A stretch of DNA of 63,558 nucleotides from Octopus bimaculoides (taxonomy: Eukaryota). Positions 5,061 through 59,691 of the stretch are shown here, one piece after another (the stretch's first letter is position 1; each line of letters starts with the position of its first letter). The notes under the pieces are model-generated. The model saw only the letters and a list, made by a program, of their open reading frames with translations, was not told where the DNA came from and did no database searches. Where the stretch lies: NCBI RefSeq assembly GCF_001194135.2, contig NC_068984.1, forward strand, positions 54,608,344-54,671,901, in the 5' to 3' direction. A program made the translations under genes and the position numbers.

Positions 5061-5908
5061 AGTTCCAACTGTCTGAGAAGTAGCATCTAAATTTCACGAA
5101 TATACACATGCAAACCCGGAAAAACCATTCAAGTGGCAACAAATTCGGTTACTTGGTGAAAAATATCCCGAAATTTATGATCTGCTTGGTCAGTAGAAAG
5201 AGATATGGTTAACAAAAGATCAACAGGCTTTTCGAGTACAGAAAGCTTTCAAGGATTAGATTAGCGAATAATTTAAGCGGGAATTGTCGGGTGCTACCAT
5301 AAGCAACAGATGTGGGGTCTAATAAAAAGAGAAATATTAGACCAACATATTAGTCCGGATAAGGAAACAGTGAACTAAGAAGAGTGAACTTTCTTACCAA
5401 CTTCGACGGTTAGGGTCAACTATTACCAGGAGAAGTAAAGTGTTGTAAAAGGTTAACGACATATGAGTTACGGGAGGTACTAAGTGAATGTGCGAGGGAC
5501 AAAACAGCGGTTTAGATTGTTCGCCAAACAAACATTATTGTCACATACGAAACTTGTTCGCTATTGTATTTGTATACGTCTGTTGCAGCTTCAAGCAAAC
5601 TAAAATCATTCTTAGTTGCATGAGTTGTTAATAATTTCAACTTAATGTCTTTGTTAAAATCAATGTTAAAGATTTTGGCCAAAGTACCTGTAAAAATGTT
5701 AGCACTTACCCTCTGTTGTGTAGTCGATTCCACACAGTCCTCATTGATTGCTAGTAAAGCCGTCCAGATCAGAGGCCTCTACCGAGAGACAGACAAAAGA
5801 GAGCTATGTTTTTAAATGCAGTCGCCATCTTAGTAAGGCTGTCAGACATTATGGAAATCAGGATGGTCGACAAATTGAATGAATATGAAGTAGTTACGGG
5901 AGTACGCA

Positions 5909-6138
5909 AGGAAGCGAGCTGGCAGAAATGTTAGCACGCCGGGCGAAATGCTTAAGGTATTTCGTCAGCTGCCACGTTCTGAGTTCAAATTCCGCCGAGG
6001 TCGACTTCGCCTTTCATCCTCTCGGGGGTCGATTAAATAAGTACCAGTTACGCAGTAGGGTCGATATAATCGACTTAATCCGATTGTCTGTCCTTGTTTG
6101 TCCCCTCTGTGTAGCCCCTTGTTGGCAGTAAAGAAATG
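5909..6138 (+). mobile_element. tRNA-derived SINE family A, full length, with an ORF1-element-type 3' tail
   Basis: A-box-like TGGCAGAAATGTTAG, B-box GAGTTCAAATTCC, central GAGGTCGACTTCGCCTTTCATCC...AAGTACCAG. Perfect 17-bp TSD AGTTACGGGAGTACGCA at 5892-5908 and 6139-6155. Confidence 0.92.
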
Positions 6139-6531
6139 AGTTACGGGAGTACGCATTAGTCAAGTGACAAGTCATTCGATTTATGGAGATACATATCCCC
6201 TGAACTTAAGGTCTGGTTGAAATGTTTGGGGCTTAGATGTGTTCACACCTTAGGTTGTGAGGAATTGAGACGCAGTTAAAGCCAGACTTCCTTGACTTAC
6301 TCAATAACACGTTGAGAGTCTGAGAAGTCGGGTAGAGCTAGCGAGCGTCTAAATCGCTTTCGCAATGAATTACCACCTCATATCCGCGTCTTACGTAGAC
6401 GGTATCTGACCAGAAGGAGTCACCAGTTAAGTATAGAAGGAGAGTTTCTCTCCGATAAATGTATTGAAAGATGGGTGAGAAAATCGAATTACTGTGGCTG
6501 ATGTACCAGTATGCAGATACACACAGACACA

Positions 6532-8245: not shown

Positions 8246-8660
8246 AACACAGCCTTATAATAAGAGAAAAAAACCTAACGTGGTTCTGTTGCAATTGTGA
8301 ATTGGGATAAAATCTCGTAAAAAAATGATTTCATTCAGTTTTAGAAGTTGATATAAAATCGAACAAACTCTTTCTAATGTCTGAGAAGTGGGGGATACAA
8401 CTCATTAATATAAATTAGTTTTACAAAATAATTCATATCAGTTTTATCTTATTCTAATTCATAATAACAATACGTGATAAATTTAGAAAATTTTATGGTG
8501 AATAGTAGGATCCGCAGTTAAAACATGTTATATACAATACTAGTGTAATTAAATTTCCCGAATAGAAATTGGATGAAAATATGTGAGTCAGCTACCTTAA
8601 GAATAATGAACCGTAAGAAGTAGTTTTTACATTGAATCCTTATTATAGAATATTGATAAT

Positions 8661-10112
8661 CTTCCCTCTTCGTAGTAACCCACATCTCATTTGCGTATAA
8701 GAGCTCAGGTAGGATGGTGCTATTGAAAAGTCTGGCTCGTATGGTATTGTCCAGTTCTGATTTGAGCACATCTTTTATTGAGGTAAACACCTTCTAACTA
8801 GCCCTTATTCTTTTCGAGATTTCAGCATCTATTTCTCGGCGTATGTCCATTTTGTGCTCTAAGTAGATGTACTCCTTTACCTCCTCCATTTCATCACTTC
8901 CAACCTCTATTCGGCTCTGTGCTACATCTTTGGACCGCGTGGTTTTTTTCTTTCCATGTGGTTCATTTTAAGGCCTACTGGGTGTCCAGCTCTGTCTGTA
9001 TGGTCTGCAGCTGATTTGTGACTTCCGCGTTGAGTACAATATAATTTGCGAATCGGAGATGAGTAGCTCGCAGTTAATGTTCACGCTTTCTGCCCAGACA
9101 ATGTCCATGATGACCATTTCTAGACATACGGTAAAGAGCTTTAGCGAGATGGGACTTCCTTGTTTGACGCCGTTCCAAACTGGAACTCTTACTGGTGGCG
9201 ATGGCAGAGCTATATCAATTGTACATACTGAGTTCGCATCTTTGAGCAGTTTGTGTATTGCGCCTCGACATATTGCATTTTCAGAGATTTCAGCAATGCA
9301 TTCATTTCGACGCTATCACCTAATAGCTTTGCAGAGAACAGAATACTTTAGGCTATCTTTCATGTTCCTCCTCATAGTTTTTTTCGTTTCTCTAATATTT
9401 TCTTTGTCTCTTCTGTCAGGGTCCGGCTAGCTTGCAATTCTCACCCTCTACACACAACTTTAATTTTCTGGACCAGTGAATTGTAGTGCTCGTCAAGCTT
9501 TTCAAGTTGACTCCAAACTTTCCTCTTGATAGCATTCTGCAACTGCGTCACATCGAAGGCCTTGAGTGTTGAGTCTTCATTGAGATGTGAAGAGCTTTTC
9601 TCTCTTTCTTTGTCGACCACGATTTAGTCAATCTCATTTTTATACTGAGCGGCTCCAGATTGCTTCCTGAATAGATTGTTCCCAATGTTTAGTATTCTTG
9701 CCGCTGCCATGGTAATCAAACCTACTCTTTCGTTTCCCGATCCATATTTTCCAACATATTTCTCGTCTTGCCACCCTATTTCAACCTTTTCTACGAGAGC
9801 ATATTCGAAATTAAACAATTCGAGAACGTAGTGGCGTGAACGATGGGATCGCAGAATACCGAAAGTACAAACTCTGCTTGGCCGGAGATGTCGTAAGGTT
9901 CACATACAACAGGTGGATCCCCACAGCTACCGAGTGATATCCAAGAGATCGAAAAAGGCCACTTGGAAGACATCTACAACAATGAGAAGATTTAATTAAA
10001 TGATTTGGAACAAGATGGAAAAGAATGACGCAATGAAGAAAGAACTGGAAACTTATCGTAACCAGCGATGTATAAAAACATCTGATAGCCTGGGCGATAC
10101 AGTGACACAGTG
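8661..10112. mobile_element. RTE-clade LINE, 5'-truncated, 5' part inverted (8661-~9788 on minus, ~9790-10112 on plus)
   Basis: Minus strand: APE end (GKYGSGNERVG..ILNIGNNLFRK), RT (VPVWNGVKQGSPISLKLFTVCLE; RARLFNSTILPELLYANEMWVTTK). Plus strand: RT C-terminus (LREHIRN*TIRERSGVND..LAGDVVRFTYNRW; YPRDRKRPLGR). Candidate TSD ATTATAGAATATTGATAAT 8642-8660 / ATTATAGAATAT-GAGAAT 10113-10130. Confidence 0.88.
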
Positions 10113-10817: not shown

Positions 10818-11025
10818 TTGGTTTCAAATTTTGGCATCAATTTCGGGGAGGGGTTAGTTGATCAAATCGACCCAATGCTCAATTAGTGCGTCTTTTATCA
10901 ACCACACCGAAAGGGAGAAAGGCAAAGTCGACTTCAGCGGAATTTGAACTCAGAACGTAAAGACGGACGAAGCGCCGCCTAGCATTTTGCCCGGCTTGCT
11001 AACGATTCGGCTAGTTCACTGCCGG
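10818..11025 (-). mobile_element. SINE family A
   Basis: Reverse complement matches the family-A head, B box (GGAATTTGAACTCAGAACG on plus) and the GTGCCAAAATTTGAAACCAA-type tail. Confidence 0.88.
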
Positions 11026-16140: not shown

Positions 16141-16171
<31 letters not shown>

Positions 16172-17739: not shown

Positions 17740-17952
17740 GATTCCAAATTTTGGCACAAGGCTAGCATTTTGGGGGATGTGATAAGTTGTTAACATCGAC
17801 TCCTGTACTCAAACGGTACTTATTTCATCGACTCCGAAAAGATGAAAGGCAAAGTCGACCTAGGCGGAATTTGAACTCAGAACGTAAAGATGGACAAAAC
17901 ACTGCTGAACATTTTGCCCGGCGTGCTAGCGGTTTCGCCAGTTCACCACCTT
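17740..17952 (-). mobile_element. SINE family A, full length
   Basis: Family-A consensus; perfect 16-bp TSD AAATGATGCCTAAATT at 17724-17739 and 17953-17968. Confidence 0.92.
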
Positions 17953-18366
17953 AAATGATGCCTAAATTAGAATGAGGTAAAATAGGATTTGAAGCAATAC
18001 AAGGTTTACAAATGTTCCAACTATTAAAAACAACGTGGTTCTAGTTTTGCAGTATAATAACAGATAATTTTAGGTATACTGACTGTTTTGATAAAAATGA
18101 ACTGCAGAAAAATATTTTTGTGTTTGCTGAATCTATTATATGTGGGCAATATATTTTAAATTGAATGATATATAGAGCAGTGCTGGATCATGTAGAAGTC
18201 TATCTTGCGGGAAAATGTGGATGAAGGCTGGGTAAATATAGCAGGATAGGAGTGCTATGGACTTGGTAATTTATTCTCTTAAGGGTATTTATTGATTTGT
18301 TCACACGCGCGCGCACGCGCGTTCACACGCACGCATGCGCACGCACGTGCACATACATATATACTA

Positions 18367-18475
18367 GTTCCAAAGTTTTGTACAAGGCCAGCAATATCAT
18401 GTAAAGAATGTAAAGACAGACGAAATGCCTTAAGCATTTTGCCCGGCGTGCTAACGATTTTGTCAGTTCGCCGCA
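18367..18475 (-). mobile_element. SINE family A with central deletion
   Basis: Head (GCATTTTGCCCGGCGTGCTAACG on plus) joined almost directly to tail (TACAAGGCCAGCAA); B-box and central domain missing. Confidence 0.75.
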
Positions 18476-22800: not shown

Positions 22801-25153
22801 AACCCGAAATATATCTAATGGATGAGTTTACGTAACAGATATTTAATAAACTAAGTCTAATCCAGTGTGAAAATTAAGTCTATTATTTCTGCACCTCGCA
22901 GCGATATGATGTGATCAGAAATATTTGTTTCAAACTTCGCAGTTTTGCAGAAATATGTAGTTATCGTAATAGGAGAAACAACCTTTAGCTATCCTTTGAA
23001 GTTCAGAAAGCGTATACCGATTGTGACAATATCGTCTTTGATAAATCGACACTTTATTTCACATAAACGAACTCATAATAGTGAGAAAAAAAATTGCTAC
23101 GGGATTTCAGTGTTTAAAATAAAATATTTTAGCGATAGTAAAATCTACTTGCATAGAAATACTTAACTCTGCGCTCAAGAAACTTGAGGTAACTATAAGA
23201 ACGACCATAGGCAAGGAATCATTTAGAAATTCAAATCATGTAGAAAGTTTAAGCTGTTTTATTCCTTATTAAGCAAAAACTTTCGTAGACATTCTATTGG
23301 TGTTTACCAATGTTTGCGTACTGTTGTCTAAAGTTGGACAAGGTTAGTTCGTGATGGAATTTCAATTCTCTGCTAAGTTATATCAGTTCAATCATAACAG
23401 TTTCACTCTTGGTCATTAATTATAAAACAGATTACATACACATTTTTGTTACTGATTTTTTTTCTTTAGAAAGTAAATGTTTTATGCCACCACCTAAGTA
23501 AGTACCAATTGAAACATGATTACCTATTTGAACGCTAAAATATTTGTTTTAAAAATCTGTGCCGCCCACAAATTAGATTTATAATTTGTAATATCTAGAC
23601 GATATTTTCTATTTATTGAAATCCGTACAAGCAAGTGTTTCTTCGAAGCAAATGTAATATGTCACTTCTGGCGATGTTTTCTTTTTTGTCCATTTATTCT
23701 GTTGAAATAAGGTACATATTTAATTTCGTCCGAAATAGTTTCGTAATTTAATAGATCCTATATAATTGAAAATATATTGCAGTAAATCCTGAAAGATTTA
23801 ATATTGATAGTCATATATATCCGTTCTATAAGGGGACTGAGTTATGTAACGTTTTAAGCTATCTGTTTTTCACAATAGCTATTTCTAATAACTAAGAATA
23901 AAGTGCAATATTTGTTGGGCGATTGTTTCTGATAATAGTTTCTGTTGTTGCTAAATATATAAAAAAAACTCAAGGAAAATTTTTGGGAATAGAATAATGT
24001 TGCTTAAATGAACTCGTGTACATATGTATTTTTTCTATTTGCTCTGGAAAGATGAAAGGAAAAGTTGAATTCGTTAGTATTAGAACGTAGAAAGCTGCAA
24101 ATAATTTATTCCGTTGCTCTATTCTTTCAAGACCTCCACTAATTTTATCTCAGATAAACCTTTCTATATGGACATATAACGTCTAGAATTTTCTTTTGCT
24201 GACCGGATTAGAGAAAATTACACTTTCTTATTTGAAATTTACGCTTTAATTTCTTTATACTTAGGGATATGTTTTGGTATTATGCCAAAAAGAAAGACTG
24301 ACACAGACAAAGTTAAATTAAAAAGAAAAAAAGTGCCAAAAGACCAAACCTTTTTTATGCTTACAAATGATATAATGATCAACTTATAGAGACGATAGTT
24401 AGCTGGCTAGTCAGAAGTTCTTTTTAAATCATTTGCACTGAGAGGTTTCCTGGCAAAAATGCAAGCCCTTCATGACACACTGTCCTTGCCTGTAATTTTT
24501 TGTTTAACCCATATCGAGCTTTTTTTGAGACTAAGTGTATAATCGGATTTCATGGATTGATGAAAAAGAAATCTATGAAAAGTGAAATAACTTCATAATT
24601 AAAGGCTTTATTAGCTTGAAGTGCTGCACATAAATTACCATAAATTACCATAAATGTAATTCATGTCTCTGGTTTAATTTAGCGAAACTAACCTTTAGAA
24701 GTGCTCAAATTATTTCTTCCGTTGTTTTCAGGTGCGAAGACAAGAATCTCCACGTTGTTTACATTACCAAGTTTAGACGTGTCATGTATTTAAAGCACAT
24801 TACATGTGGACAGATTATTTCTTTATTAGGCATAAAGCCCTAAATACAGATGGGGACACCACAAGGACAGACAAAACCACAGTGGGGACAAAAAACATAA
24901 AACGAATGTAAATGAGATGAAAGTTATATAAAAATGAAAAAATGAAAATGGACGCATGGGCCCCACTTCCATGCAGTACCATTTGAACCATTATATGTAT
25001 TATCTACAATTGTTCTTTTTTCCCTTTAATTTCATACTTTTTTTTTGTCTTTAGTAGAACTTCATCAATGGTTCGATATGTCTTAAATTCACCACTGGTG
25101 GCAACTCTCCAAATTTCACCTCCACTCCTGGCGGGTCAATGCTATCTCCACAC

Positions 25154-26793
25154 ATAGGAGAGTGCTGATTAGATTAACGAAGAAGGTGTAAGTTTATTTT
25201 GTCTGTTGGTTTGCTTTGGTGAAGGATTGTTTTTTTTGTTGTATGCTGCTTTGCAGCGGTGTAGTTGTGCTTTCCCTCTTTGAGAGTTAGTATGGATAGT
25301 AAAAGTAAAAGGAATTCTTTTTACTCAGACCTTAGCGGGTCTGAGTTGTCATCATCCGAAGAAGAATTGCTAAGGACTGTTGAGGTTATGGATAAGGAGT
25401 TGAAAAGGAGGAGGTTCGGAGATGTCGCCCGAGATGACAAATGTGTTAATTGATATCTAGAAGTACAAGAATCTGAGTCGAGACGGTTACAACGTGCAAG
25501 TTTCTCGAAACGGCAAAAATGATGAAAGGTAGAACCATAATGTATAAGAAGTACTCAAGAAAGGAAAAATAGACCACATGATGACGGAGCAGGCGGAGAA
25601 GGGGATGAGGCCAATCTGGCAAGAAATAACATATCTTGCCAGAGGGCCGAAATTAGGTGAAATAGAAGTAAGATTCATAAACGAGAACACGGCGAAGAAG
25701 CACGCGGCAATGCCATTAAAGGACGAAGAGTTAGTATTTCTATCCACGTACCTGGGACAAAGAGCGTCTCGAGTAAGGGTAGAAGGAATTCCTCCAGAAA
25801 TAGACGTAGCCTGGATAGCGGCTGCTGTATTGGCCGAGACTGACGGCAAAATAGTGGTGCTCAAGACAACTAAAACAAAAAGTGTAAATTGGAAGGACCA
25901 AGTTTTGAACATGATAGTGCAAGGTTCAAGTGAGACTATAGAAGAGATGGTAGAAACAGTGACTGTGGATGAAATTATAATGAATGTAAGGGTGGAGGGC
26001 AAAATACCGCGCTGTTTTAAATGTGGTCAGAATGGCCACATAAGAGCGAAATGCCCTCCACCAGATAAAAGAGTGGAGGAAGTGCAAGAAGAAAGCAGTA
26101 AGGAGAAGACACAAGAGACGCCTCTGGAAGAACAGCAGGAGGAAGAATTGGTTCCAGAAAAAGAGGAAGAGTGGGAAAAGAGAAGGAAGAGGAAAAAGGC
26201 AAGTCCAATACACACAAAACTTCACGCAACAACTACCTAAGGCCCACCCATACCCTATCTGTCCCATCCTCGCCCTGCAGACACTAAGCCTTCCCATTCC
26301 CCACGATCACAAAAACAAAAGAAAAGAGTACATTCAGACAATGCTTCAAAAATTCCCCTCCCCCCAGTGGATGTTTTGCGTGTATAATTCATGACGATGA
26401 CCTGTTTGTAAAGGCTATTGAATGGGAGAACACATTGCATGTTGGTGTGGTGCTATTATTAACGACACAGCAAAAGATGTAAGTAGAGAGACACAATGTG
26501 AATTATGAAATATGGAAGGTTGATTTCGATAAGGAGAAAATACCACAGTTTATTGAGTCTGAAGAATTGAAAGAGAGATTTGGGTTGGACATAATGGGGT
26601 ATACAGAAAAGGAAGCAAGTGATGTTACTTGATGGGGCGGGTTACACCATTTTCATCATTACATTTTTTCCATCTTTCATGGTATCATACGTTTTTATTT
26701 ATTTTATATTTTATTTTAATTGTACATTTTTTATGTCCCCAATGTAATTGTATGTCCCACTTTGTCGGCCCCCTCGTGGGTAATAAAGAATTA
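25154..26793 (+). mobile_element. ORF1-only retroelement, 1640 bp, apparently full length (HAL1-like architecture)
   Basis: Perfect 17-bp TSD CAATGCTATCTCCACAC at 25137-25153 and 26794-26810. About 140 bp leader, disrupted ORF1, T-rich 3' UTR ending AATAAAGAATTA. No RT or endonuclease sequence. Confidence 0.9.
25292..26632 (+). pseudogene. LINE ORF1/gag-like protein with one CCHC zinc knuckle, frameshifted (largest open block 25578-26240)
   Basis: MDSKSKRNSFYSDLSGSE... start; RRM-like RVRVEGIPPEI; PRCFKCGQNGHIRAKCP knuckle; E/K-rich linker; C-terminal KEKIPQFIESEELKERF. Aligns by eye to ORF 27830-28522. Confidence 0.82.
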
Positions 26794-27072
26794 CAATGCT
26801 ATCTCCACACCTGTCTTTCAACTTTCTGTAGTTTTCCTCCTCAATCAATATTGCCTTCATATCCTCTGCATATATGTATGAAGGCACCTTCACTCTTACT
26901 ATTGAATGAAACTTATTTTTTTTCTGTTTCTACATTCTTTGGGTACGTCACATAATACCACACTCCATCTCCTCCTCGTATCTTCTTTCCTTTCTCTCGG
27001 ACTTTTTGTTGTCTCTTTTCTTCCTCCATAAATAGTCTCTCCATCTCACCTTCCTACAGTTGGATTTCCGAC

Positions 27073-27283
27073 GTTACCAATGCAAAAGTAGGGGACACAT
27101 GCAAGCAAAGTGTCCCCTAAGAGAGGCGAGCGAGGATGCAGCGGTGGAAGAAAATAAAAACGAAGAGACAACAGATAAAAAAAGAGCGAGGGTGGAGTCG
27201 CCACCCAAAAGTCAAAAAAAAAAAAGGAAGAAAAGACAACAGCAAGTGGAAGTACAGAGATTCGAACGCAGGAAGCGGAGCCA

Positions 27284-27318
<35 letters not shown>

Positions 27319-27850
27319 AAAAGGGCGAAAGTGGATGAGGAGAGTGGAAGAGAGGATAGCGTATGTAAGGAGGACAGAACGAACTAAGGGACGACACTTG
27401 GAAAAGTTAATTTTCTATTATATGGTCATTGAAATTGAGAAAAAATTAACGAAAATGAAAGGGATAGTAAGAATAAAGTTGGAGCAACATATGTTTGAAC
27501 AAGATGATAGAGCGTTATTGGTGGATGTAGAGAAGATAGAAAGACTAACGGAGTTGTTTGAAAACAAGATTCCTAAAAGTAAACTATATGTTCGGAACGA
27601 AAATCTACCCAAGGTAATAGGTGTAGAGGAACTTATGGAACGTATAACGCACGAATGTAATCGATCACTAACTGTATAAAGAAAACTGTAAAATGGAACT
27701 ACGAGCTTTAGGGGGCTCGTAAGCCATTTCATCCTTTCATTAAAATATTCCATCACATATTCCTCATTCGTTACATGTACCCCACGTTTTGTGTTGTCTG
27801 TCCTTGAAATGTCCATTCTATATTGGACTTTATGCCCAAATAAAGATAGT
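27073..27850 (+). mobile_element. ORF1-only retroelement, 5'-truncated copy
   Basis: 15-bp TSD AGTTGG(A/G)TTTCCGAC at 27058-27072 and 27851-27865. Starts at a decayed knuckle (RYQCKSRGHMQAKC), has the C-terminal domain (ORF 27335-27679) and a 3' UTR ending AAATAAAGA. Confidence 0.87.
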
Positions 27851-30569
27851 AGTTGGGTTTCCGACTCTTTCTCCAATGGAACAACTGGTATCTTTACTGG
27901 TAACTCCACTTTCTTTTTCCTTCCTACTACCCACCTTCACAGTTTCTTTTCTCACCCCTTCTCTCTTCTTTTTCTGTTTCTCTGGTGGAAAACTCATTTC
28001 TCCGCTCCTTTTCTTTTTAACCATAGTGAATCCCTTCGTTTCTTTTTCTGTTGCCTTGTCCTGTACTACCTGGTCCACACTCTCCTGCCTCTTCTCCTGT
28101 TCTGTTTGTGGCTTTCTTTGGGTGCACCATGCCGCCCTGTGGCCCCTTTCTCCACATGTGAAACACACTGGCGGCCTCCCCTCCATTGTAACTCTCAGTC
28201 TCGCATCTTCTGGCAGCACAATCTCATTCACCAGACTGTTCAAGTCCTCTGTTGTTGCCTGAATTGTTAATTCGATACCATATCCCCAGTGATCTACCTT
28301 CTGAGTCCTTGTAGCCTTCAGAATCTTCCCGTCTTTCATATTATATATTATGGCTGTCATCAGACATTCTTCTTTCAATTCGGGTGGCACCTTACCCACT
28401 CGCACATTGGCCACACGTTTGCTGCAGTACGAAGGCAAGAGCACCCATTCCTCTGTCCTTATTGCCTCTGTGGAGTGTTTTATTGTAATAAGATTACTGT
28501 TACTTGGTTCCCTCCTATTCACTTACAGTAGCTACTCAGTATATTTGTAGAGAACGACTAAATCAATAAAATATCACAATAAAAATCAGCATGCTAAAAT
28601 ATAAATTTGATGAATCATTACATGTACTTAATGCATTCTGCGAGAATTCATTATATTGGAATTAAATCTTTAAAATCTAATATGAGCGTCATGGAAAATG
28701 TACTATATTAGATGCATAGTAACTTAGACTATATAGTTTACAGACTAAAGTATGTAGTCCATCTTATTACGAGAAACTCCTCAAAGATATAAATTTAAAA
28801 TCTTGTCCTACTCTGATGAAGGTATGATGTGTTGACGGAGAAAATTGACTAAAAGGTTTAAAGATATATGTATGAGAGTCATAATAAGTGAAAGAATGGC
28901 AATCCTTAATACAAGATCTAGTTTCTGTATCATTAAGCAGATGTTAGACACTTTTGCAACTGAATACAGTATTAGAACCATACCGACTTACACCTTCAAT
29001 GTCGGTGCATTTTGACAAAAGTTTAAGAAGTTCGATTCACAACTACGAGATGTCCGGTTCGATCTCACTATGTAGCATTTTGGGTAAATACAATTTTCTG
29101 CACCTTCAGGTTGACTCATACCTTGAAATTAGATTGACGGAAACTGCATAGGGACCTACAATTCAAAAGGTACAACCTTGTTAAATACTGTGTCAGGCTG
29201 ATTCTACCAATGAATTACATTGAGGATTCCCGTATCTGTATAATGTTTAATCATTTACGTGTTAATTTAGGAGCATGTAATTCAGTTGATTGAACAATTT
29301 AATCTTTGTCGAACGACAGAGATCCTTCACCTCCACAGCTTCAACGGAAAGGACCACTGAAAGGTAAATGTCTTGGCAATGGAGAAAAAGCAGGAAATGA
29401 ACTGCTGACCTTTAAACTGGCTGTCTCTCTCAAGTAAATTAAATGTTAAATGCTGGGCTATAAACAAGAAAAAAAAATTAAATTCTCTGCAAGTGTAAAG
29501 GCATTTTGTTGTTATAAATTATTGCAAATGTTATTATATTAAAATTACTGTATATTCTGTTACTCTGTTCCTACTTGTATATAAATCCATTTTTTTCTGT
29601 TAACAAATTATACAAGTCAATTCTTCATAGATTAAGCAATTGGAATATTGTTTGGGTTTGCTCACGATAAAATAAAAATAGTTTTGGTAATAATAATTTT
29701 TATACTTTTTTTGTAATAATTTACAAAATTTATTAATTTACTTTAGTAGCTGTATATTTTTACATGTGATATATTTGTCACGTTTTGAAAAGATAACAAT
29801 ACATAATAATAAATGTAGCACTTATAAAATCTAATGTCAATTTTACATTGTTTGATATTTGCCGTAAAGATGAAACTGGTTTCACAAGAGATTCTTAAAT
29901 GTTTCCAATTATCTTTTTATTGCATATTGTTTATTATTAATAATTTCAAAATTATCCTGGAGACTGAAGCAAAGGCAACAATATCTGTTATGTATTTCAC
30001 CTGTTATACAAAATTTAATAAACTGGATTCATTTGTAAATAGAAAACTGATGTTGGTATAATTATCACAAAAACAGATTGGCCAAAAGCAGCTGGGTGAG
30101 TACAAATATAAAATTAATATTTCATTTAATAACTGCTATAACCATTGAATGAGCTTTAGGTAGGATGGCAGCGGTTAACCAAATGCAATTAATCTTCACA
30201 TATGATTAAATTTATGCTTCTTTCATGACACTCTGCTAGATGGAAATATTCACCCCTAACAAAAGTTCAAATATTGGATTAGTATTGAAATACTAAAATA
30301 TTTCATGCATGAAGATGGTATCTTACGTAATTGTTCAACCAGGAAGAAATAGAGGTAAAATTTCAACTCCAACCCTCCCTATCTGTCTTAGAAAAAAAAC
30401 ACGTTTGAGAATGACCAGATGGAATAACTTTTAACATAAATATGCTCGATTAGAGCTGACCCAAAGTTAAGCAACAACAATAACAATGTATGTGCAAGAA
30501 TAAGAATATTAGTTTATATTTTGTGTTCAACAAGTATGTAAATAATGGTTTCTTAGGCTGACAGGAGAC

Positions 30570-35799: not shown

Positions 35800-38700
35800 T
35801 ACAACAGATTAGACTATTCTAAAAACCACGACAACATTCTTTTCCAGGTAAATATAACCTTGCTACACCTGCTCTAAGATGGTGCTCAATTCACATTGGA
35901 TTCCTTCCTAATTCTGTCTTGATTTGCTAATCCAGGTTTTGACCAATCTACAAAAGCTACTGCATATCTAAGAAACGATACTGCCCAAGTATTTACAGCC
36001 TTCACTAGATTTGAACCATTTAGCTTTGACTTCATTAACTTCCTCACCTATCTGATGTATTCCTCAATTTTCTTTCGTTTCTCTAGTTTCTTCTCTGTAA
36101 GATTCTAGTACTCTTAGATATTTATAACTTTCTCCTTCTTTCAGTGATTCTAATGTCTGGCCATCTGGTAAGTGAATGCCTTCACTGACTACCTGTCCCT
36201 TTTTTATGAGTAACACTGTGCACTATCTTTCCCAAATTCTATGAATATTATTATTATTATTATTAAGGGAGAAAGCTGGCAGAATTGTTAGCATGCCGGA
36301 CAAAATGCTTAGGGGCATTTCGTCCATCTTTGCATTTCATTTTCACCAAGGTCGAGAGTTAGCCTTTCACCCTTTCAAGATCAATAAAATAAACACTAAG
36401 TTGAGTACTAGATTCAATGTAATCGATTAAACCCGCCCTCCGAAATTGCTGGCCTCGTACTAAAATTTGAAACCATTGTTAATATTATTTTCTTCTTGAT
36501 GTTATTTCTGATAAACAGGCATCTCTAGTCGGCTCCGAGGATATTGGGATTTCCTGCATTTAATTTGATTGAAAGTTTCGTCCTATTTTGCAAGAGAAAT
36601 TTAGAACGTCTGAGTGTCCACCTCTTTGTCCTAGGGTAGGACATAAATTTTATCGTTAGGCATATTTCATATTTTTCATTTTTGCAAATATTGTTTACCA
36701 TTTAAATTTGCTTTAAATTTCTTCCCTTTCTTTGAGAAGTACATAACTGTTCGTTGAAACTGATACTTCTATTAGGAGTGATTTTACTTCCTGATAATAT
36801 CTGCTCATTTATTCTTACTTTGTCTGTTTGTGTAGACTAGTATATTTTTGAATATTATCACTTATCATTTTTTAACACATTTCTGATGAATGTTTATACT
36901 GCCTCTTTCATAATAGCGGCATAATTTCTGTCTTGCCTGTAAGTATATTCTTTCTTGGTTAAACCTGGGTCATTAGACGCAATGTAATTAATTGTTTTTT
37001 CTCGACCTCCACAAATTCTTCAGTTTCTAAACGCATTCCACTTCATTAGAAGTGTTTTATGGTCTCTGGGAGACTCCATTCCTGTGTTACAAACAAAAGG
37101 GCGATTTCGTTCCTGTGCCACAATCAAGAATCCTTCAGTCTCAGGAAGTGATATGCTTTTTCCATGTCTAATTCCACTCTATTTAGTTTATTCAGGTATT
37201 TTGTCATGCGCGTAGTTTTCTCTTTTGCAAATCTAACTACGATAGCTAGCACACCCATGAGATTCCCTTATTTTGTAGCACTTAACTCTTGTTTAAATAT
37301 TTATGTAAATACGCCTTTAATATTGTTTCCTTATTTTTCTTTCATTTATATGACTGTCTTATCTAATTCTCTTTCATTGTTTATTTATGTAATATAATAT
37401 TTTCTCAATTTATTTTTCTCTTTTCAAGTTGGTTGGGCATATTCCTCTTATCCAAATCTCATAACTTCTTATAGTAAATCTATGTAATGTCTGTATGAGT
37501 GTTTCTAGTTGTTTATCATATACAGCGTGAACCTCGAGGTTAACCAAATACAAAAGATGGCTCATTGCCATATCACATTTGTACCTAAGTTGAATCTGAC
37601 TTAACATGTTGGTCGAAGAGATTAGCGCCAGACAGGAAAGGAACTGATACTGGGAGATCCATGGAATATTCGTCTTCTGTTGTCTGCATCTGCAGGATTA
37701 TTTTTCGTTTACTCATGATGCATATAATGCACTTGATTTATAAGTGGTGCAACTTTACTCATGACAAATATTTTCAGAATGCCAGTACAGGGAAACCGTT
37801 AAATGCCTTCTGTCAGTCCACATCTAGCTCTGACCCTTTTCCGCCTCCTGCATGTTCCAATTATAGCCCTACGATTAGTAAGTGATCTTCACAGTTATAT
37901 GATCCTTTCAGCATCCTTTCACTCTTCTGAAAATAAATTTATTTTCCCTGATGCTTCTATGTTATTAAAGTAAAGGCTTTGTAAGCTAAAGGAAGGCTTG
38001 TTATGAGGCTGTACATAAGTTTTCTGCTTTTAGTTCTGAAGATTAAGATGATTTTTCACCTCTCACTGAACCAGTTAGGTGTTTTCGTCTTTGTCAGTAT
38101 CATATTAGACACCTCTGCTAGTGCTGTATGTCAACCTAGAAGTTTTGAATCGTGCTATTTATTAGTACCTGCTGATTCTGTAGCTCTTTGAATGCTTCTA
38201 AAGAACATAGGTTTCCGTAAGCTGGTTTAAATTCTGCATTCGTTGTTTTGAGCAGCCCCATCCGTTGAGATACTTTCGCTATTCATACTTATCCCCACCA
38301 CCTAAAATTTTTCTACTTGCTTTGCTGTAAGTTCCACATTTATTTCCATTTTGTTTTATACCTAGTTTTTTTTTAATCAAAATATTTTGGTTTGGAGTTG
38401 AAATGCTTGTTATGTTCGAAGAACCGTTGTCACCTTTCATACCGAGAAATATTTTGCAATTTAGCAAGAACCTATCCTTTATGGACATATTCTCCATTGT
38501 AACTATTGTATTTGTTGTACCTATTATTTTGGTGATAATAATGTTCGCACATTATGAGTTACTTTCGTTGTAAGATTTTCTAATGATTCTAAATATATAA
38601 TTAGTTCCAATTGATTGTCATCTTTAAGATTTCACTCACTAGAATTTTCTTTTACTTTTCTTGTATTTTCCTCATATTTTTAAAGATAGTTTTTACGTTG

Positions 38701-40085: not shown

Positions 40086-40968
40086 AAGACGGCGAGCGGG
40101 ACAGTTGTTACCGTGCCGAACAAAATGTTTAGCGGCCTTTCTTCCGGCTTTACGTTCTGAGTTCAAATGCCACCGAGGTCGACTTTGATTTTGGTTCTTT
40201 TGGGGGTCGATAAAATAAGTACCATTTGAGCACTGAGATCGATGTAATCAACTTATCCCTCCCTTAAAATTACTAACCTTGTGCCAAAATTTAAAACCAT
40301 TATTAAGGCGGCGCACTGGCTGAATCCTTAGCTTACCGAGTAAAATGCTTAGGGACAGTTCGTCCGTCTTTACGTTCTGAGTTGAAATTCTGCTCAGCTT
40401 AAATGTGTCTTTCGTCTTTTTGATATTGATAAAATAAAATACGTACAAGCTGAGCACTGGCTTCAATATAATCAACTAGTCCTCACTCCCGAAACTGCTG
40501 GCCTTTTGCCAAAATTTGAAACCACTATTAAAGCGGTTGGCTGGCGGAAACGTTAGCACGCTGGACAAAATGCTTAGTCACATTTCGTCCGTCTTTTTGT
40601 TCTGAGTTTAAATTTCGCCGTGGTGGTCTTTGCTTTTCATCCTTTCAGGGTAGATAAAATAAGTCCCTGATCATTACTGGGTTCGACGTAAACGGCTGGG
40701 TACCTCCCCCAAAATTTCCTGCCTTGTGTCTGTAGTAGAAAGGACTATTAAGGCAGTGAACTGACAGAAACGTTAGCACGCCGGACAAAATGTTTAGCCA
40801 CATTTCGTCCGTCTTTACGTTCTGAGTTGCAATTCCGCCGAGGTCGATTTTACCTTCATTCATTCGGTGCCGATAAATTAAGTACCAGTCATGCATTGGT
40901 ATTGATATAATCTACTAAACTGCTCTACCAAAATTTAGGCCTTGTGCCTATAATAGAAACGATTATTA
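40086..40968 (+). mobile_element. Head-to-tail array of four full-length family-A SINEs (~220 bp each)
   Basis: Units start near 40086, 40305, 40530 and 40750, each after (A/C)TATTAA. Units 1-2 end GCCAAAATTT(G/A)AAACCA; units 3-4 end TGT(G)(T/C)CT(G/A)TA(G/A)TAGAAA. Confidence 0.92.
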
Positions 40969-43690: not shown

Positions 43691-43903
43691 AGGCGGCGAG
43701 CTGGCAGAAACGTTAGCACGCCGGGCGAAATGATTAGCGGTGTTTCGTCCGCCGTTACGTTCTGAGTTCAAATTCCACCGAGGTCAACTTTGCCTTTCAT
43801 CCTTTCAGGGTCGATAAATTAAGTACCAGTTGCGTACTGAGGTCGATCTAATCGGCTGCTCCACTCACCCGAAATTTCGGGCCTTGTGCTTAGAGTAGAA
43901 AAG
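43691..43903 (+). mobile_element. SINE family A, well preserved
   Basis: AAGGCGGCGAGCTGGCAGAAACGTTAGCACGCCGGGCG...GAGTTCAAATTCC...; imperfect TSD AATAT(AC/GT)CTATCTT. Confidence 0.92.
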
Positions 43904-45787: not shown

Positions 45788-46310
45788 NNNNNNNNNNNNN
45801 NNNNNNNNNNNNNNNNNNNNNNNNNNNNNNNNNNNNNNNNNNNNNNNNNNNNNNNNNNNNNNNNNNNNNNNNNNNNNNNNNNNNNNNNNNNNNNNNNNNN
45901 NNNNNNNNNNNNNNNNNNNNNNNNNNNNNNNNNNNNNNNNNNNNNNNNNNNNNNNNNNNNNNNNNNNNNNNNNNNNNNNNNNNNNNNNNNNNNNNNNNNN
46001 NNNNNNNNNNNNNNNNNNNNNNNNNNNNNNNNNNNNNNNNNNNNNNNNNNNNNNNNNNNNNNNNNNNNNNNNNNNNNNNNNNNNNNNNNNNNNNNNNNNN
46101 NNNNNNNNNNNNNNNNNNNNNNNNNNNNNNNNNNNNNNNNNNNNNNNNNNNNNNNNNNNNNNNNNNNNNNNNNNNNNNNNNNNNNNNNNNNNNNNNNNNN
46201 NNNNNNNNNNNNNNNNNNNNNNNNNNNNNNNNNNNNNNNATATATATACCAACACGCAACAGCTCCGCTATTAGTGTAAACTCTCACGCTCACTCCTCCG
46301 TTTCTTTCCT

Positions 46311-46355
<45 letters not shown>

Positions 46356-46694
46356 TTCTTTCACCGAATACAACAATAGTAGAATTTTGACCGAATAGCA
46401 GTGTCTATTTCCTCAATGTTCATTTGAACTAATAGTTAGTTACAACATAATTACTATCCTTATTCATTCTGATAATGTATCGATGCTGATTTAAGCTGAG
46501 CTTATGTCTTAGCTCTTAGGTTCGGAAAATTAATTCACTGTTATACCCCATATTTGTTACTGAATAAGGCTGATTTCAAACGAAACGGGTTAAATTACTT
46601 TCCATTTGTGAGTTTTGAAAATACCCTAAGAGTCTTCTTATAACAAATATAGACATACACTAATTACATTCCTACGCGCGCGCGAACACACACA

Positions 46695-48029: not shown

Positions 48030-48069
<40 letters not shown>

Positions 48070-48434
48070 GGGAGAGAAACACATACATGCATTATTAGCA
48101 TACTAAATTTGATGATTGTTTTAAAATTCATTGACACTCTCCTAAACTGCTCCACTAAGGAATTAAAAACTACATCAAAATTACTGCGTGAATAATGTAC
48201 ACTATGTAACGAAAATAACAAGAAAACACATCTGAATTAATACATAATAAATAACCGTAGCTCAGCTTAAGTTTCGTACTTGAGCTTGCGTGACCATCAG
48301 AGGAGGTGGGGAATCAATTTAAAGTTATTTTTTCTGATACACATCCTATAGTAACTATAAAATAAAGAAGATTACTCATACGCAAAACGATAAATAGTAG
48401 GAACTTAAAATATACTTTACTGAACTGACATACA

Positions 48435-48991: not shown

Positions 48992-49463
48992 CATATTTCT
49001 ACATACATGCATATTTAAGAGAATGTGAGTTTATGGGAGAGAGAGAGAGATCTATATAATATAAACACAAGCACATACATATATGTGCGTGTGTACATCA
49101 ATGTCAATATATATTTCTACATACATATTGAGCCGAGTGAGTTAATGAGGGAGAGAGAAAGAGAGAGAGAGAGAAAGAAAGATGGAGAGAGAGAGAGATG
49201 TATATAATATAAATATAATCGTATGTATGTATCTATTTTTGTAGCTTGTATAATGATCTGAAACGTACGTATTAAATGCGATAAAACTATCAAAATTTAA
49301 AGTGAAGTATATTTGCCACTTAAATGTGGCTGACTCCTAAGGGTGGATGTTACTGTTGCTTTTAGCCCCAGGAGAACATCTCCTCCAGCTGGCTATCGAC
49401 ACACATCTGTGTCCTGTCTATATGTGCAAAGGGAAGTTATCTTTCCCATCTTGATCTGCGATA

Positions 49464-59099: not shown

Positions 59100-59653
59100 A
59101 TTCTGAAACTTTTGCCACAGTTATGCTGCATTTGAGCTTTTCAAAGGATTGTGAAGAACCTTGATGCCTCCTCATTATAGAGAGGTATTTCATTGTTGCT
59201 ATCCTTTTTTTGTTGCCAAGAACCCAGCAGACTGGATCATCTGCTACGGTTTCTTATTGACTAGGATGACCGATTAAGCATTATATTGATTAGGAGCAGT
59301 TTCGTGAATGACTGCGGTCATTTTAGCGCTAATATTGAGCCCGAAAGCCTTGCAAACATCAGAGAAATGACCCATTAATAATTACTTTTTCATCTCATTG
59401 TATGTTGCTTTGTTGCAGTCATCTAAATGTAAGGTGTTTCTGATCAGAACAATTAATACTTTCGTTTCAAATAAGTCTCAATAAGTTAAATACTTTGCCT
59501 GAAGCTTGTTATTAGATATAGATAAGCTAGGCTATCATTGGAATATGTGAAAGATACAACAGTAAAGAACTTTGTGAATAAAGATGCAACGGTGTCTTCT
59601 TGTTTAACCCTATTTTCTACTTGGAATAATTCAGAGAATAAATTCTACTTGGA

Positions 59654-59691
<38 letters not shown>

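What the first reader, a model, noticed from the sequence alone, without database searches (positions are those of the whole stretch)
24815..28545. Nested trio of RT-less gag-like retroelements: two copies inserted antisense into a third
Seen: both plus-strand inserts have their own TSD (17 bp perfect at 25137/26794; 15 bp with one mismatch at 27058/27851). Excising them restores one minus-strand element. The first junction reads in frame (DRCGDSI|DPPG), and the second joins KESETQL to *EGEMERLF with one stop. The three are clearly homologous but diverged at protein level, so this is not tandem duplication. No other ORF1-bearing copy is evident elsewhere in 63 kb. Established: Tx1-clade LINEs often target specific repeats, including other transposons. 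Inference: this family preferentially targets its own relatives in a fixed antisense orientation, a possibly undescribed self-targeting non-autonomous system.
Basis: partly seen in the sequence, partly recalled or inferred. Interest (0 to 1): 0.85.

Follow-up and report, generated by a model that had tools for sequence, protein, structure and literature searches.

The report
Nested ORF1-only LINE copies in octopus
Three decayed copies of an octopus jumping-gene family that keeps only the RNA-binding first gene of a LINE element are stacked inside one another, a real but essentially ordinary nested insertion, with no sign so far that the family is built to target itself.

Summary
Copy A (25154-26793, +) and copy B (27073-27850, +, 5'-truncated inside its zinc knuckle) are separate insertions into an older minus-strand copy C. 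Each has its own target-site duplication (17/17 and 14/15 nt). Uninterrupted octopus relatives read straight across both insertion points, and the duplicated residues map twice.

The "gag" is the ORF1 of an octopod LINE: a ferredoxin/RRM-like domain, one CCHC knuckle, a K/E-rich linker and a C-terminal domain. In Octopus vulgaris, O. sinensis and Argonauta the same ORF1 is followed by an ORF2 with endonuclease, reverse transcriptase and zf-RVT domains. A, B and C are ORF1-only derivatives, analogous to mammalian HAL1. They share a specific poly(A)-less 3' tail with the autonomous LINEs and with a SINE in this window, so they are probably mobilised in trans. Their ORF evolves under constraint (dN/dS 0.17-0.40).

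Self-targeting in a fixed antisense orientation is not supported. In eight other loci, copies sit in a SINE, satellite or unrelated DNA, the four TSDs share no motif, and the other two clusters are head-to-tail. Three of nine loci do hold several copies, more than chance predicts, and that remains unexplained.

The parts
27866..28540 (-). Host element C, 5' piece: possible head remnant, RRM-like domain, CCHC knuckle (CFTCGERGHRAAWC) and the first part of the K/E-rich linker. The open frame is 27830-28522. The 5' end is uncertain (28518-28545), and C lacks the N-terminal ~100 aa seen in relatives.
   Evidence: Family core HMM hit at 28106-28486, E=2.5e-49. Pfam zf-CCHC E=9e-5. 74-80% aa identity to P0026 and P0153. 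Head comparison.
27851..27865 (.). TSD2, right copy (AGTTGGGTTTCCGAC). It is host C sequence encoding SETQL on the minus strand.
   Evidence: residues map twice on P0154, P0153 and P0003.
27073..27850 (+). Insert B: a 778-bp, 5'-truncated ORF1-only copy. It starts inside the CCHC knuckle (YQCKSRGHMQAKC), then has a K/E-rich linker with a (GA)n run at ~27290-27316, an intact 114-aa C-terminal-domain ORF (27335-27679), and a 3'UTR with the tail GTCTGTCCTTG...GCCCAAATAAAGATAGT.
   Evidence: CTD HMM E=1.9e-34. Tail z=16 vs C and z=11 vs L004 el.1.
27058..27072 (.). TSD2, left copy (AGTTGGATTTCCGAC).
26811..27057 (-). Host element C, middle piece: linker and the first half of the C-terminal domain (...EGEMERLFMEEEKRQQKV...VRVKVPSYIYAEDMKAILIEEENYRKLKD). 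It has one stop and one frameshift.
   Evidence: CTD HMM hits at 26795-27017. 64-78% identity to P0153 and P0003.
26794..26810 (.). TSD1, right copy (CAATGCTATCTCCACAC). It is host C sequence encoding RCGDSI on the minus strand.
   Evidence: family D8.
25154..26793 (+). Insert A: a 1640-bp ORF1-only copy with 5'UTR, a decayed N-terminal region (ATG at 25293, stops and frameshifts), an open 220-aa stretch 25578-26240 (RRM-like domain plus CCHC at ~26010-26057), a decayed proline-rich linker and C-terminal region, and a 3' tail ...TGTATGTCCCACTTTGTCGGCCCCCTCGTGGGTAATAAAGAATTA. There is no ORF2.
   Evidence: Core HMM E=9e-58. Pfam zf-CCHC. Three-frame read. Tail z=11.2 vs the autonomous L008 LINE tail. 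Groups with L008 and L006 in the ORF1 tree.
25137..25153 (.). TSD1, left copy (CAATGCTATCTCCACAC).
24816..25136 (-). Host element C, 3' piece: end of the C-terminal domain (DPPGVEVKFGELPPVVNLRHIEPLMKFY*), then a 3'UTR with the tail GTCTGTCCTTGTGGTGTCCCCATCTGT...GCCTAATAAAGAAATA. The 3' end is placed to within about 8 nt.
   Evidence: CTD HMM hit at 25054-25155. 79% identity to P0153 and P0003. Tail z=32 vs L004 el.1.
5909..6139 (+). A tRNA-like SINE copy elsewhere in the window that carries the same LINE-type tail (TTGTCTGTCCTTGTTTGTCCCCTCTGTGTAGCCCCTTGTTGGCAGTAAAGAAATGA). It is flanked by a 16-17-nt TSD, (A)GTTACGGGAGTACGCA, at 5893-5908 and 6140-6155. It shows that the same machinery inserts into non-family DNA.
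   Evidence: Tail z=13.9 vs the L008 LINE and z=17.1 vs the L004 LINE.

Best explanation
The locus is a pile-up of three non-autonomous, ORF1-only ('half-LINE') retrotransposons of an octopod APE-type LINE family. The window is almost certainly octopus DNA.

The autonomous relatives encode two proteins. ORF1p has an N-terminal region, a ferredoxin/RRM-like domain, one CCHC knuckle, a K/E-rich linker and a C-terminal domain. ORF2p has an AP-endonuclease, a reverse transcriptase and a zf-RVT domain. The ORF1-only derivatives keep the 5'UTR, ORF1 and a sequence-specific, poly(A)-less 3' tail (..GTCTGTCCTTG..GTCCCC.TCTGTGT..AATAAAGAA).

Inferred mechanism: their RNA is bound by its own ORF1p, and ORF2p supplied in trans by an autonomous relative copies it at a nicked target, recognising the shared tail. 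This is target-primed reverse transcription. It produces 15-19-nt TSDs and frequent 5' truncation.

Order of events, shown by the sequence: C inserted first on the minus strand. A (full length) later landed in C's C-terminal-domain coding region, and B (5'-truncated) landed in C's linker region. Both happen to be antisense. All three then decayed.

Inferred: the nesting itself needs no dedicated mechanism. It reflects chance or a regional insertion bias, not programmed self-targeting.
For: Nested insertion: TSDs, and pieces of C that abut exactly on uninterrupted relatives, with the TSD residues mapping twice.

Size of the family: 660 proteins at E<=1e-3 and 160 at E<=1e-10. Named members come from O. 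bimaculoides, O. sinensis, O. vulgaris and Argonauta hians.

ORF1 belongs to a LINE. In L008, ORF1 is followed by an intact 1132-aa ORF2 with Exo_endo_phos 2e-15, RVT_1 8e-31 and zf-RVT 5e-9. That ORF2 aligns colinearly with human L1 ORF2p at E=2e-71. L007, L009 and L010 also carry ORF1 plus RT. L004 el.4 has the ORF1 N-terminus followed by APE and zf-RVT.

ORF1-only architecture recurs with conserved ends: A, B and C, L003, L004 el.1-3, L005, and L006 (1598 bp with a 19-nt TSD).

Shared tail: A~L008 LINE z=11.2; SINE~L008 z=13.9; SINE~L004 LINE z=17.1; C~L004 el.1 z=32; B~C z=16. The exact 11-mer GTCTGTCCTTG occurs five times in 121 kb, each time 40-55 nt before an element's 3' end.

ORF constraint: dN/dS 0.17-0.40 among ORF1-only copies. 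At least two ORF1-only lineages exist, one grouping with the autonomous L008 LINE.

No targeting rule: the four TSDs differ in sequence and strand composition, solitary copies lie in SINE, satellite or unrelated DNA, and the other clusters are sense-oriented.

Precedent: HAL1 encodes only ORF1p and arose several times (PMC5753468).
Against: Trans-mobilisation by ORF2p, and ORF1p binding its own RNA, are inferred and not shown.

The tail has no predicted conserved secondary structure, so what is recognised is unknown.

The tails of B and C resemble the two ORF2-bearing LINE tails only moderately (z 2-7). Their exact autonomous partner is not identified, and the RT of L004 el.4 lies in an N gap.

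Two family insertions into one 1.2-kb host are improbable under uniform insertion at the density measured in the same data: P about 4e-4 to 8e-4. In addition, 3 of 9 loci hold several copies. Some non-random clustering is therefore likely and is not explained by 'chance'.

The locus sample is small and biased towards annotated ORFs.
Confidence: 0.78

Rival explanations
1. Family-level affinity without a fixed orientation. New copies of this LINE family, autonomous or ORF1-only, integrate preferentially into or immediately next to resident relatives. Possible causes are local re-insertion near the source copy, an endonuclease or priming preference for sequences enriched in the elements, or RT template jumping between family RNAs. 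The outcome is either nested stacks (this window) or exact head-to-tail arrays (L004, L008).
For: Three of nine independent loci hold several copies, whereas ~88 kb of other sequence around the first copies holds none. P(>=2 hits in a 1.2-kb host) is <=8e-4 at the 95% upper bound of the density. In L004, units of different subfamilies (el.2 to el.3, ~40% aa) are joined exactly tail-to-head (...AATGAAAAC|GTTGAATAGCAG), which simple duplication does not explain. Both targets in C lie on an unusually pyrimidine-rich strand, in the lowest 1-3% of the window.
Against: The sample is small and ascertained. The window was flagged because of the nesting, and the loci were chosen through annotated ORFs. 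The L008 units are 99.0-99.6% identical and the last one is 3'-truncated, which fits ordinary tandem duplication. L004 is a gapped draft region. The TSD-defined targets of the SINE and the L006 copy are purine-rich, non-family DNA. No shared target motif was found.
Confidence: 0.2
2. One reading: a self-targeting non-autonomous system that inserts into its own relatives in a fixed antisense orientation.
For: A and B are both antisense in C. The sense strands of all copies are 59-72% purine, so a pyrimidine-strand preference would give antisense nesting.
Against: With n=2, both antisense has p=0.25. The two sites are non-homologous and share no motif. Of eight further loci, none shows antisense nesting. 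All six neighbour pairs in the L004 and L008 clusters have the same orientation. L006 is sense-oriented in a SINE. ORF1-only elements have no endonuclease of their own, so target choice would be that of the shared ORF2p, which also places a SINE in unrelated purine-rich DNA.
Confidence: 0.06
3. Processed pseudogenes. A, B and C would be retrocopies of mRNAs of a cellular CCHC-protein gene family, inserted by some LINE, and not transposable elements in their own right.
For: Each unit looks like an mRNA (5'UTR, one ORF, 3'UTR with AATAAA) and is annotated in databases as an 'uncharacterized protein'.
Against: The same ORF directly precedes an APE-RT ORF2 in four loci from three species. There is no poly(A) tail. 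The conserved tail is shared with LINEs and a SINE. There are hundreds of diverged clusters. Conserved 5' heads join tail-to-head.
Confidence: 0.03
4. Assembly artefact or local rearrangement (inversion or duplication) rather than insertions.
For: The window is a gapped draft with N runs elsewhere. No independent assembly of the locus could be retrieved.
Against: There are no Ns in 24800-28560. Perfect or near-perfect TSDs sit exactly where uninterrupted relatives show continuity. The three copies share no nucleotide similarity that could mislead an assembler.
Confidence: 0.02

Closest known systems
HAL1 ('half-L1') of mammals
   Same: It is a non-autonomous LINE derivative that encodes only ORF1p, keeps the LINE's ends, depends on ORF2p supplied in trans, and arose more than once (PMC5753468). 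Here there are at least two ORF1-only lineages with the ORF under constraint.
   Different: The host phylum differs (cephalopod mollusc). ORF1p is Type I-like (RRM-like domain plus a CCHC knuckle and an extra C-terminal domain), not the coiled-coil/RRM/CTD Transposase_22 type, and Pfam finds only zf-CCHC. The 3' end is a specific tail without poly(A), so partner recognition is probably 'stringent' rather than poly(A)-based.
L1/Tx1-group LINEs with Type I ORF1p (plant L1, Tx1-like elements of fish, amphibians and other non-mammalian animals)
   Same: Two ORFs. ORF1p has an RRM-type domain plus a CCHC knuckle (PMC5203782). ORF2p has APE, RT and a C-terminal zinc-binding domain and is colinear with human L1 ORF2p (E=2e-71).
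   Different: Clade placement by RT phylogeny was not done, because no reference set was available. Many Tx1-group elements are site-specific, and the four TSDs here show no common target. Most copies here have a specific non-poly(A) tail.
SINE/LINE pairs with a common 3' tail (the Okada model; Ohshima & Okada 2005, listed among the references of PMC9115989)
   Same: A tRNA-like SINE in the window (5909-6139) carries the same tail as the autonomous LINEs and the ORF1-only units. This implies one RT recognising one tail.
   Different: Here a third class, protein-coding ORF1-only elements, uses the same tail. No conserved stem-loop is detectable in the tail.
HeT-A of Drosophila telomeres (a Gag-only non-LTR element)
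   Same: It encodes only the ORF1/Gag-like protein, relies on another element's RT, and occurs in head-to-tail arrays (this comparison rests on my own knowledge).
   Different: The arrays here are chromosome-internal, at ~51 Mb of a 94.6-Mb chromosome and ~31.9 Mb of a 40.2-Mb one. Copies have TSDs and are dispersed. There is no evidence of a telomeric role.

Membership tests
Non-LTR (LINE-type) retrotransposition by target-primed reverse transcription | Variable-sequence target-site duplications flanking each insertion | tested here: met
   17/17 nt for A and 14/15 nt for B; 16-17 nt for the SINE; 18/19 nt for the L006 copy.
Non-LTR (LINE-type) retrotransposition by target-primed reverse transcription | Complete 3' ends with frequent 5' truncation; no LTRs or TIRs | tested here: met
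   B starts inside the CCHC knuckle and the L005 copy starts inside the RRM-like domain, and both have complete tails. No terminal repeats were found.
Non-LTR (LINE-type) retrotransposition by target-primed reverse transcription | Autonomous relatives encode APE endonuclease plus reverse transcriptase | tested here: met
   L008 ORF2: Exo_endo_phos 2e-15, RVT_1 8e-31, zf-RVT 5e-9. L010, L007 and L009 also have RVT_1.
ORF1-only non-autonomous LINE derivative (HAL1-like kind) | Encodes a protein homologous to the ORF1p of an autonomous LINE | tested here: met
   The core HMM hits A (9e-58) and C (2.5e-49), and hits the ORF1 of the ORF2-bearing L007, L008, L009 and L010 at 1e-45 to 1e-58.
ORF1-only non-autonomous LINE derivative (HAL1-like kind) | No ORF2/RT between the element's ends | tested here: met
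   A is 1640 bp between perfect TSDs and L006 is 1598 bp between TSDs. L004 el.1-3 are 1.6-1.9-kb units joined tail-to-head.
ORF1-only non-autonomous LINE derivative (HAL1-like kind) | Shares the 3' end with an autonomous partner | tested here: met
   A's tail vs the L008 LINE tail gives z=11.2 with 0/500 shuffles as high. For B and C the link is weaker: z=3-7 to the L004 LINE, plus the shared 11-mer.
ORF1-only non-autonomous LINE derivative (HAL1-like kind) | Actually mobilised in trans by the partner's ORF2p | not testable with these tools
   This needs a retrotransposition assay. It is inferred from the TSDs, the 5' truncation and the shared tail.
HAL1 proper (mammalian L1-derived) | Derived from mammalian L1, with a Transposase_22-type ORF1p | tested here: not met
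   The host is an octopus. Pfam finds no Transposase_22, only zf-CCHC. It is therefore an analogue, not a member.
Tx1 clade, site-specific LINEs | RT phylogeny places the element in Tx1 | not testable with these tools
   No reference RT set was on hand. The only evidence is that the closest solved structure is human L1 ORF2p and that ORF1 has the Type I layout (PMC5203782).
Tx1 clade, site-specific LINEs | Insertion into one specific target sequence | tested here: not met
   The four TSDs are CAATGCTATCTCCACAC, AGTTGGATTTCCGAC, GTTACGGGAGTACGCA and CAGAAACGTTAGCACGCCG. They share no motif and the flanks differ.
Retroviral / LTR-retrotransposon Gag | Capsid domain plus nucleocapsid knuckle(s), in an element with LTRs | tested here: not met
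   Only the knuckle matches NC proteins (E~2e-4). There is no capsid family in Pfam, no fold match and no LTRs.
Type I LINE ORF1p (RRM + CCHC) | An RRM fold followed by a CCHC zinc knuckle | tested here: inconclusive
   The CCHC knuckle is met (Pfam). The AlphaFold2 core (residues ~40-140, pLDDT ~90) is a beta-alpha-beta-beta-alpha-beta fold. Foldseek gives only weak ferredoxin-like hits (ACT, NikR, EF-1beta, ARS2 RRM; best E=7e-3).

The most novel reading that the evidence does not exclude
Members of this octopod LINE family, including its ORF1-only parasites, have a real affinity for integrating into or exactly next to resident relatives. Possible causes are local re-insertion, priming on family sequence, or RT template jumping between family RNAs. 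This would build both nested stacks and mixed-subfamily head-to-tail arrays at internal chromosomal sites, a homing behaviour not described for L1-like elements with non-specific endonucleases.
Probability: 0.2. Interest if true: 0.7.

Novelty: new member of a known kind. Interest (0 to 1): 0.35.

Why it matters
Cephalopod genomes are dominated by retroelement expansions, yet published octopus work names only RTE and Dong LINEs as candidates for activity (PMC9115989). This finding defines another LINE lineage, L1-like in its ORF2 and Type I-like in its ORF1, that is present across Octopodiformes. It links three passenger classes that share one 3' tail: the LINE itself, a SINE subfamily, and protein-coding ORF1-only elements. 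Such a set-up allows a test of what ORF1p contributes when it is separated from ORF2p, outside mammals. In practical terms, hundreds of 'uncharacterized CCHC-type proteins' in octopus annotations are ORF1 remnants of this family. The self-targeting idea that made the finding look exciting is not supported by the data at hand. Only the milder question remains: why are copies clustered?

Tried and rejected
- Rfam scan of the whole window: no family, including no ribozyme.
- RNAalifold on eight tails: no consensus structure.
- Foldseek of the AlphaFold2 model against the PDB: nothing below E=1e-3, so 'RRM' stays 'RRM-like'.
- PDB sequence search with the family profile: only the knuckle matches.
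- First homology search with A's ORF: the best relative was missed by one residue of the length window. The profile search with A4 was swamped by low-complexity words and gave nothing new.
- Look-ups of P0003 and of A's own ORF: not on record, so neither P0003's mosaic structure nor an independent assembly of the locus could be examined.
- Pyrimidine-rich-strand target preference as the cause of antisense nesting: both sites in C fit, but the SINE target is 60% purine and the L006 copy sits in unrelated SINE sequence. I did not adopt it.
- A 'GTT' motif at 3' junctions: present at several junctions (B, the SINE, the L004 junctions) but absent at A and L006. Too few sites to adopt.
- C's own TSD: a 10/10 match, CATTACATGT (24798-24807 and 28616-28625), is near chance level, and its position implies odd ends. 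Left open.
- The shared 'ATAGGAG' at the start of A and at 28518 in C is too short to define C's 5' end. The head-like CTGAGTAGCTAC at ~28528-28539 is an alternative.
- Tandem duplication, LTR/TIR element and twin-priming inversion: rejected, because the copies share no DNA identity and each has its own TSD.

Full report
OBSERVATION

The window is AT-rich eukaryotic DNA (about 35% G+C). It has N gaps, microsatellites, SINEs and a Tc1/mariner remnant.

- The 17-mer CAATGCTATCTCCACAC is present at 25137-25153 and 26794-26810.
- AGTTGG[A/G]TTTCCGAC is present at 27058-27072 and 27851-27865.
- These repeats delimit insert A (25154-26793, +) and insert B (27073-27850, +).
- On the minus strand, the three remaining pieces (about 28540..27866, 27057..26811 and 25136..24816) form one element, C.
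- Joining only short flanks gives an in-frame DRCGDSI|DPPG at site 1 and KESETQL*EGEMERLF at site 2.

The strongest confirmation comes from outside the window. Octopus proteins P0153, P0003, P0026 and P0154 are uninterrupted relatives of C, 65-80% identical to it. In tblastn the pieces of C abut exactly on them. The residues encoded by the two repeats, (M/R)CGDSI and SE(T/I)QL, each align twice, once on each side of an insert. That is the signature of a target-site duplication in a continuous host sequence. The stop lies one codon beyond TSD2 and corresponds to Y or Q in the relatives, so it is a point mutation.

The three copies are homologous but old. A and C are 32% identical over 121-136 aa (E 1e-13 to 1e-17). 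The C-terminal domains of B and C score 68 against 26 +/- 4.9 for shuffles. The tails of B and C give z=16. There is otherwise no nucleotide similarity. B is 5'-truncated inside its zinc knuckle. No further copy exists in the window. There are no LTRs or TIRs.

WHAT THE ELEMENTS ARE

A profile of the conserved core finds 660 proteins at E<=1e-3. The named ones are 'uncharacterized' or 'CCHC-type' proteins of Octopus bimaculoides, O. sinensis, O. vulgaris and Argonauta hians. The window is therefore octopus DNA. Its N-gap style matches the O. bimaculoides loci.

Pfam recognises only the CCHC knuckle. The PDB sequence search likewise matches only retroviral nucleocapsid or ZCCHC knuckles. AlphaFold2 gives one confident domain (residues about 40-140, pLDDT about 90) with beta-alpha-beta-beta-alpha-beta topology. 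Foldseek finds only weak ferredoxin-like matches. 'RRM-like' is therefore plausible but unproven, and 'gag-like' is justified only by the knuckle.

Eight genomic loci around family members were fetched and scanned with family HMMs. In four of them the same ORF1 is followed by a LINE ORF2.

- L008 (O. vulgaris) has an intact 1132-aa ORF2 with Exo_endo_phos (2e-15), RVT_1 (8e-31) and zf-RVT (5e-9). It aligns colinearly with human L1 ORF2p at E=2e-71.
- L010 (Argonauta), L007 (O. sinensis) and L009 (O. vulgaris) also show RVT_1.
- L004 el.4 has an ORF1 N-terminus running into APE, then an N gap, then zf-RVT.

So the 'gag' is the ORF1 of an APE-type LINE. An RRM-type domain plus a CCHC knuckle is the Type I ORF1p layout reported for plant L1 and Tx1-group elements (PMC5203782). 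Clade membership was not testable here.

By contrast, A, B, C, L003, L004 el.1-3, L005 and L006 are units of about 1.2-1.9 kb. Each has a 5'UTR, this one ORF and a roughly 200-nt 3'UTR, with no room for an ORF2. L006 is a clean second example: 1598 bp, with a 19-nt TSD, CAGAAA[C/T]GTTAGCACGCCG.

In a tree of the ORF1 core, A and L006 group with the autonomous L008 LINE (87/83). C, L003, L004 el.1/el.3 and L005 form a separate clade (99/97) that has no ORF2-bearing member in this sample. dN/dS among the ORF1-only copies is 0.17-0.40, so the ORF has been maintained during their divergence.

All of these elements end in a related, poly(A)-less tail (..GTCTGTCCTTG..GTCCCC.TCTGTGT..AATAAAGAA).

- A's tail matches the L008 LINE tail (z=11.2).
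- C matches L004 el.1 (z=32).
- One SINE in this window (5909-6139, 16-17-nt TSD) carries the same tail: z=13.9 to the L008 LINE and z=17.1 to the L004 LINE.
- The exact 11-mer GTCTGTCCTTG occurs five times in 121 kb, each time 40-55 nt before an element's end.
- No conserved secondary structure is predicted in the tail.

MECHANISM

Shown by the data: insertion with 15-19-nt TSDs, 5' truncation, complete tails, and absence of an RT in these units.

Inferred: the units are transcribed, their RNA is bound by its own ORF1p, and ORF2p from an autonomous relative recognises the shared tail and copies the RNA at a nicked target. This is target-primed reverse transcription, on the LINE/SINE common-tail model.

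C integrated first. A then entered C's C-terminal-domain coding region and B entered C's linker. All three then decayed. The closest known kind is HAL1, the ORF1-only derivative of mammalian L1 that arose repeatedly (PMC5753468). This family is an analogue in a mollusc with a different ORF1 type and a specific tail. It is not a member of HAL1.

SELF-TARGETING

- Two antisense hits out of two have p=0.25.
- The two sites in C are non-homologous.
- The four TSD-defined targets share no motif.
- The SINE target is purine-rich unrelated DNA.
- L006 lies sense-oriented in a SINE.
- The L003, L005, L007, L009 and L010 copies lie in non-family DNA.
- The only other multi-copy loci are head-to-tail. 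L004 has mixed subfamilies joined exactly tail-to-head. L008 has three units 99.0-99.6% identical.
- ORF1-only elements carry no endonuclease, so target choice belongs to the shared ORF2p.

Evidence that something non-random remains:

- About 88 kb around the first-fetched copies holds no additional copy. At the 95% upper bound of that density, two hits in a 1.2-kb host have P<=8e-4. Conditional on three copies in the window, P is about 4e-4.
- Three of nine loci are multi-copy.

The sample is small and ascertained. The window was flagged because of the nesting, and the loci were chosen through annotated ORFs. I therefore rate a mild family-level clustering tendency at about 0.2 and the fixed-antisense system at about 0.06.

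VERDICT

Its headline inference is not supported. This is a new member of a known kind, a HAL1-like half-LINE in octopods, with a modest open question about clustering.

No step had to be referred.

Noticed in passing
L004:9329-18160 (O. bimaculoides CM046610.1:51452671-51473339): A head-to-tail array of family units with exact tail|head junctions (...AATAAAGAAAAC|GTTGAGCAGCAG..., ...AATAATGAAAAC|GTTGAATAGCAG...). It mixes subfamilies: el.1 and el.2 are similar, while el.3 is about 40% aa identical to them. It ends with an ORF2-bearing unit followed by another ~90-nt head. A TATAAATA lies ~33 nt upstream of the first head. The array is bracketed by inverted-repeat arms (8440-8690 and 8910-9163 vs 18163-18420). 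Several N gaps make the structure uncertain.
   Followed up: partly
L008:4447-19184 (O. vulgaris OX597840.1): Three head-to-tail full-length LINE units (ORF1 plus an intact 1132-aa ORF2 in unit 1), 99.0-99.6% identical. Junctions are exact (...AAAACACTGATAA|GGACGTTACTTTGAC...) and the last unit is 3'-truncated. This is a possibly recently active autonomous LINE that is neither of the two octopus LINEs, an RTE and a Dong element, named in PMC9115989.
   Followed up: partly
P0003 (UniRef A0A0L8G4Z0_OCTBM, 386 aa): A mosaic protein. Residues 1-186 are A-type (about 80% identical to copy A apart from an 18-aa deletion). Residues ~193-386 are C-type (74-79% identical to copy C), and the 'EW..V..KKRKR'-like motif occurs twice. 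It could be a recombinant (template-switched) element or a gene model that fuses two adjacent or nested copies. Its locus is not on record.
   Followed up: partly
window:5909-6139: A tRNA-like SINE copy with the LINE-family tail and a 16-17-nt TSD. Roughly ten other SINE copies or fragments in the window (e.g. ~10856-11020, 17815-17944, 36274-36435, 40755-40919, 43696-43857) share its body, and those whose 3' ends were read end in a different tail (..GGCCTTGTGCCAAAATTTGAAACCATTATTA). One SINE body is thus paired with at least two LINE-type tails.
   Followed up: partly
window:640-1311 (-): A 223-aa ORF of a Tc1/mariner-type transposase remnant (DDE_3 E=2.4e-11, HTH_Tnp_Tc3_2 E=7e-5).
   Followed up: yes
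window:27290-27316: A (GA)n microsatellite has grown inside the K/E/R-rich linker coding region of copy B. Similar (GA)n tracts elsewhere in the window (16143-16171, 46310-46360, 48030-48078, 49147-49198, 59652-59689) carry no family insertion.
   Followed up: no
L005:11302-11335 and L004:18072-18160: In two loci the element's 3' tail is followed by a short fragment resembling a family 5' head, and then by unrelated DNA. This could reflect read-through from tandem source copies (3' transduction) or template jumping.
   Followed up: no
window:12.9-13.2 kb, 45.7-46.3 kb, 47.5-48.0 kb, 55.8-56.4 kb: Runs of N flanked by microsatellites ((TA)n, (GA)n, (TATC)n). These are assembly gaps of a short-read draft. 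None lies within the finding.
   Followed up: no
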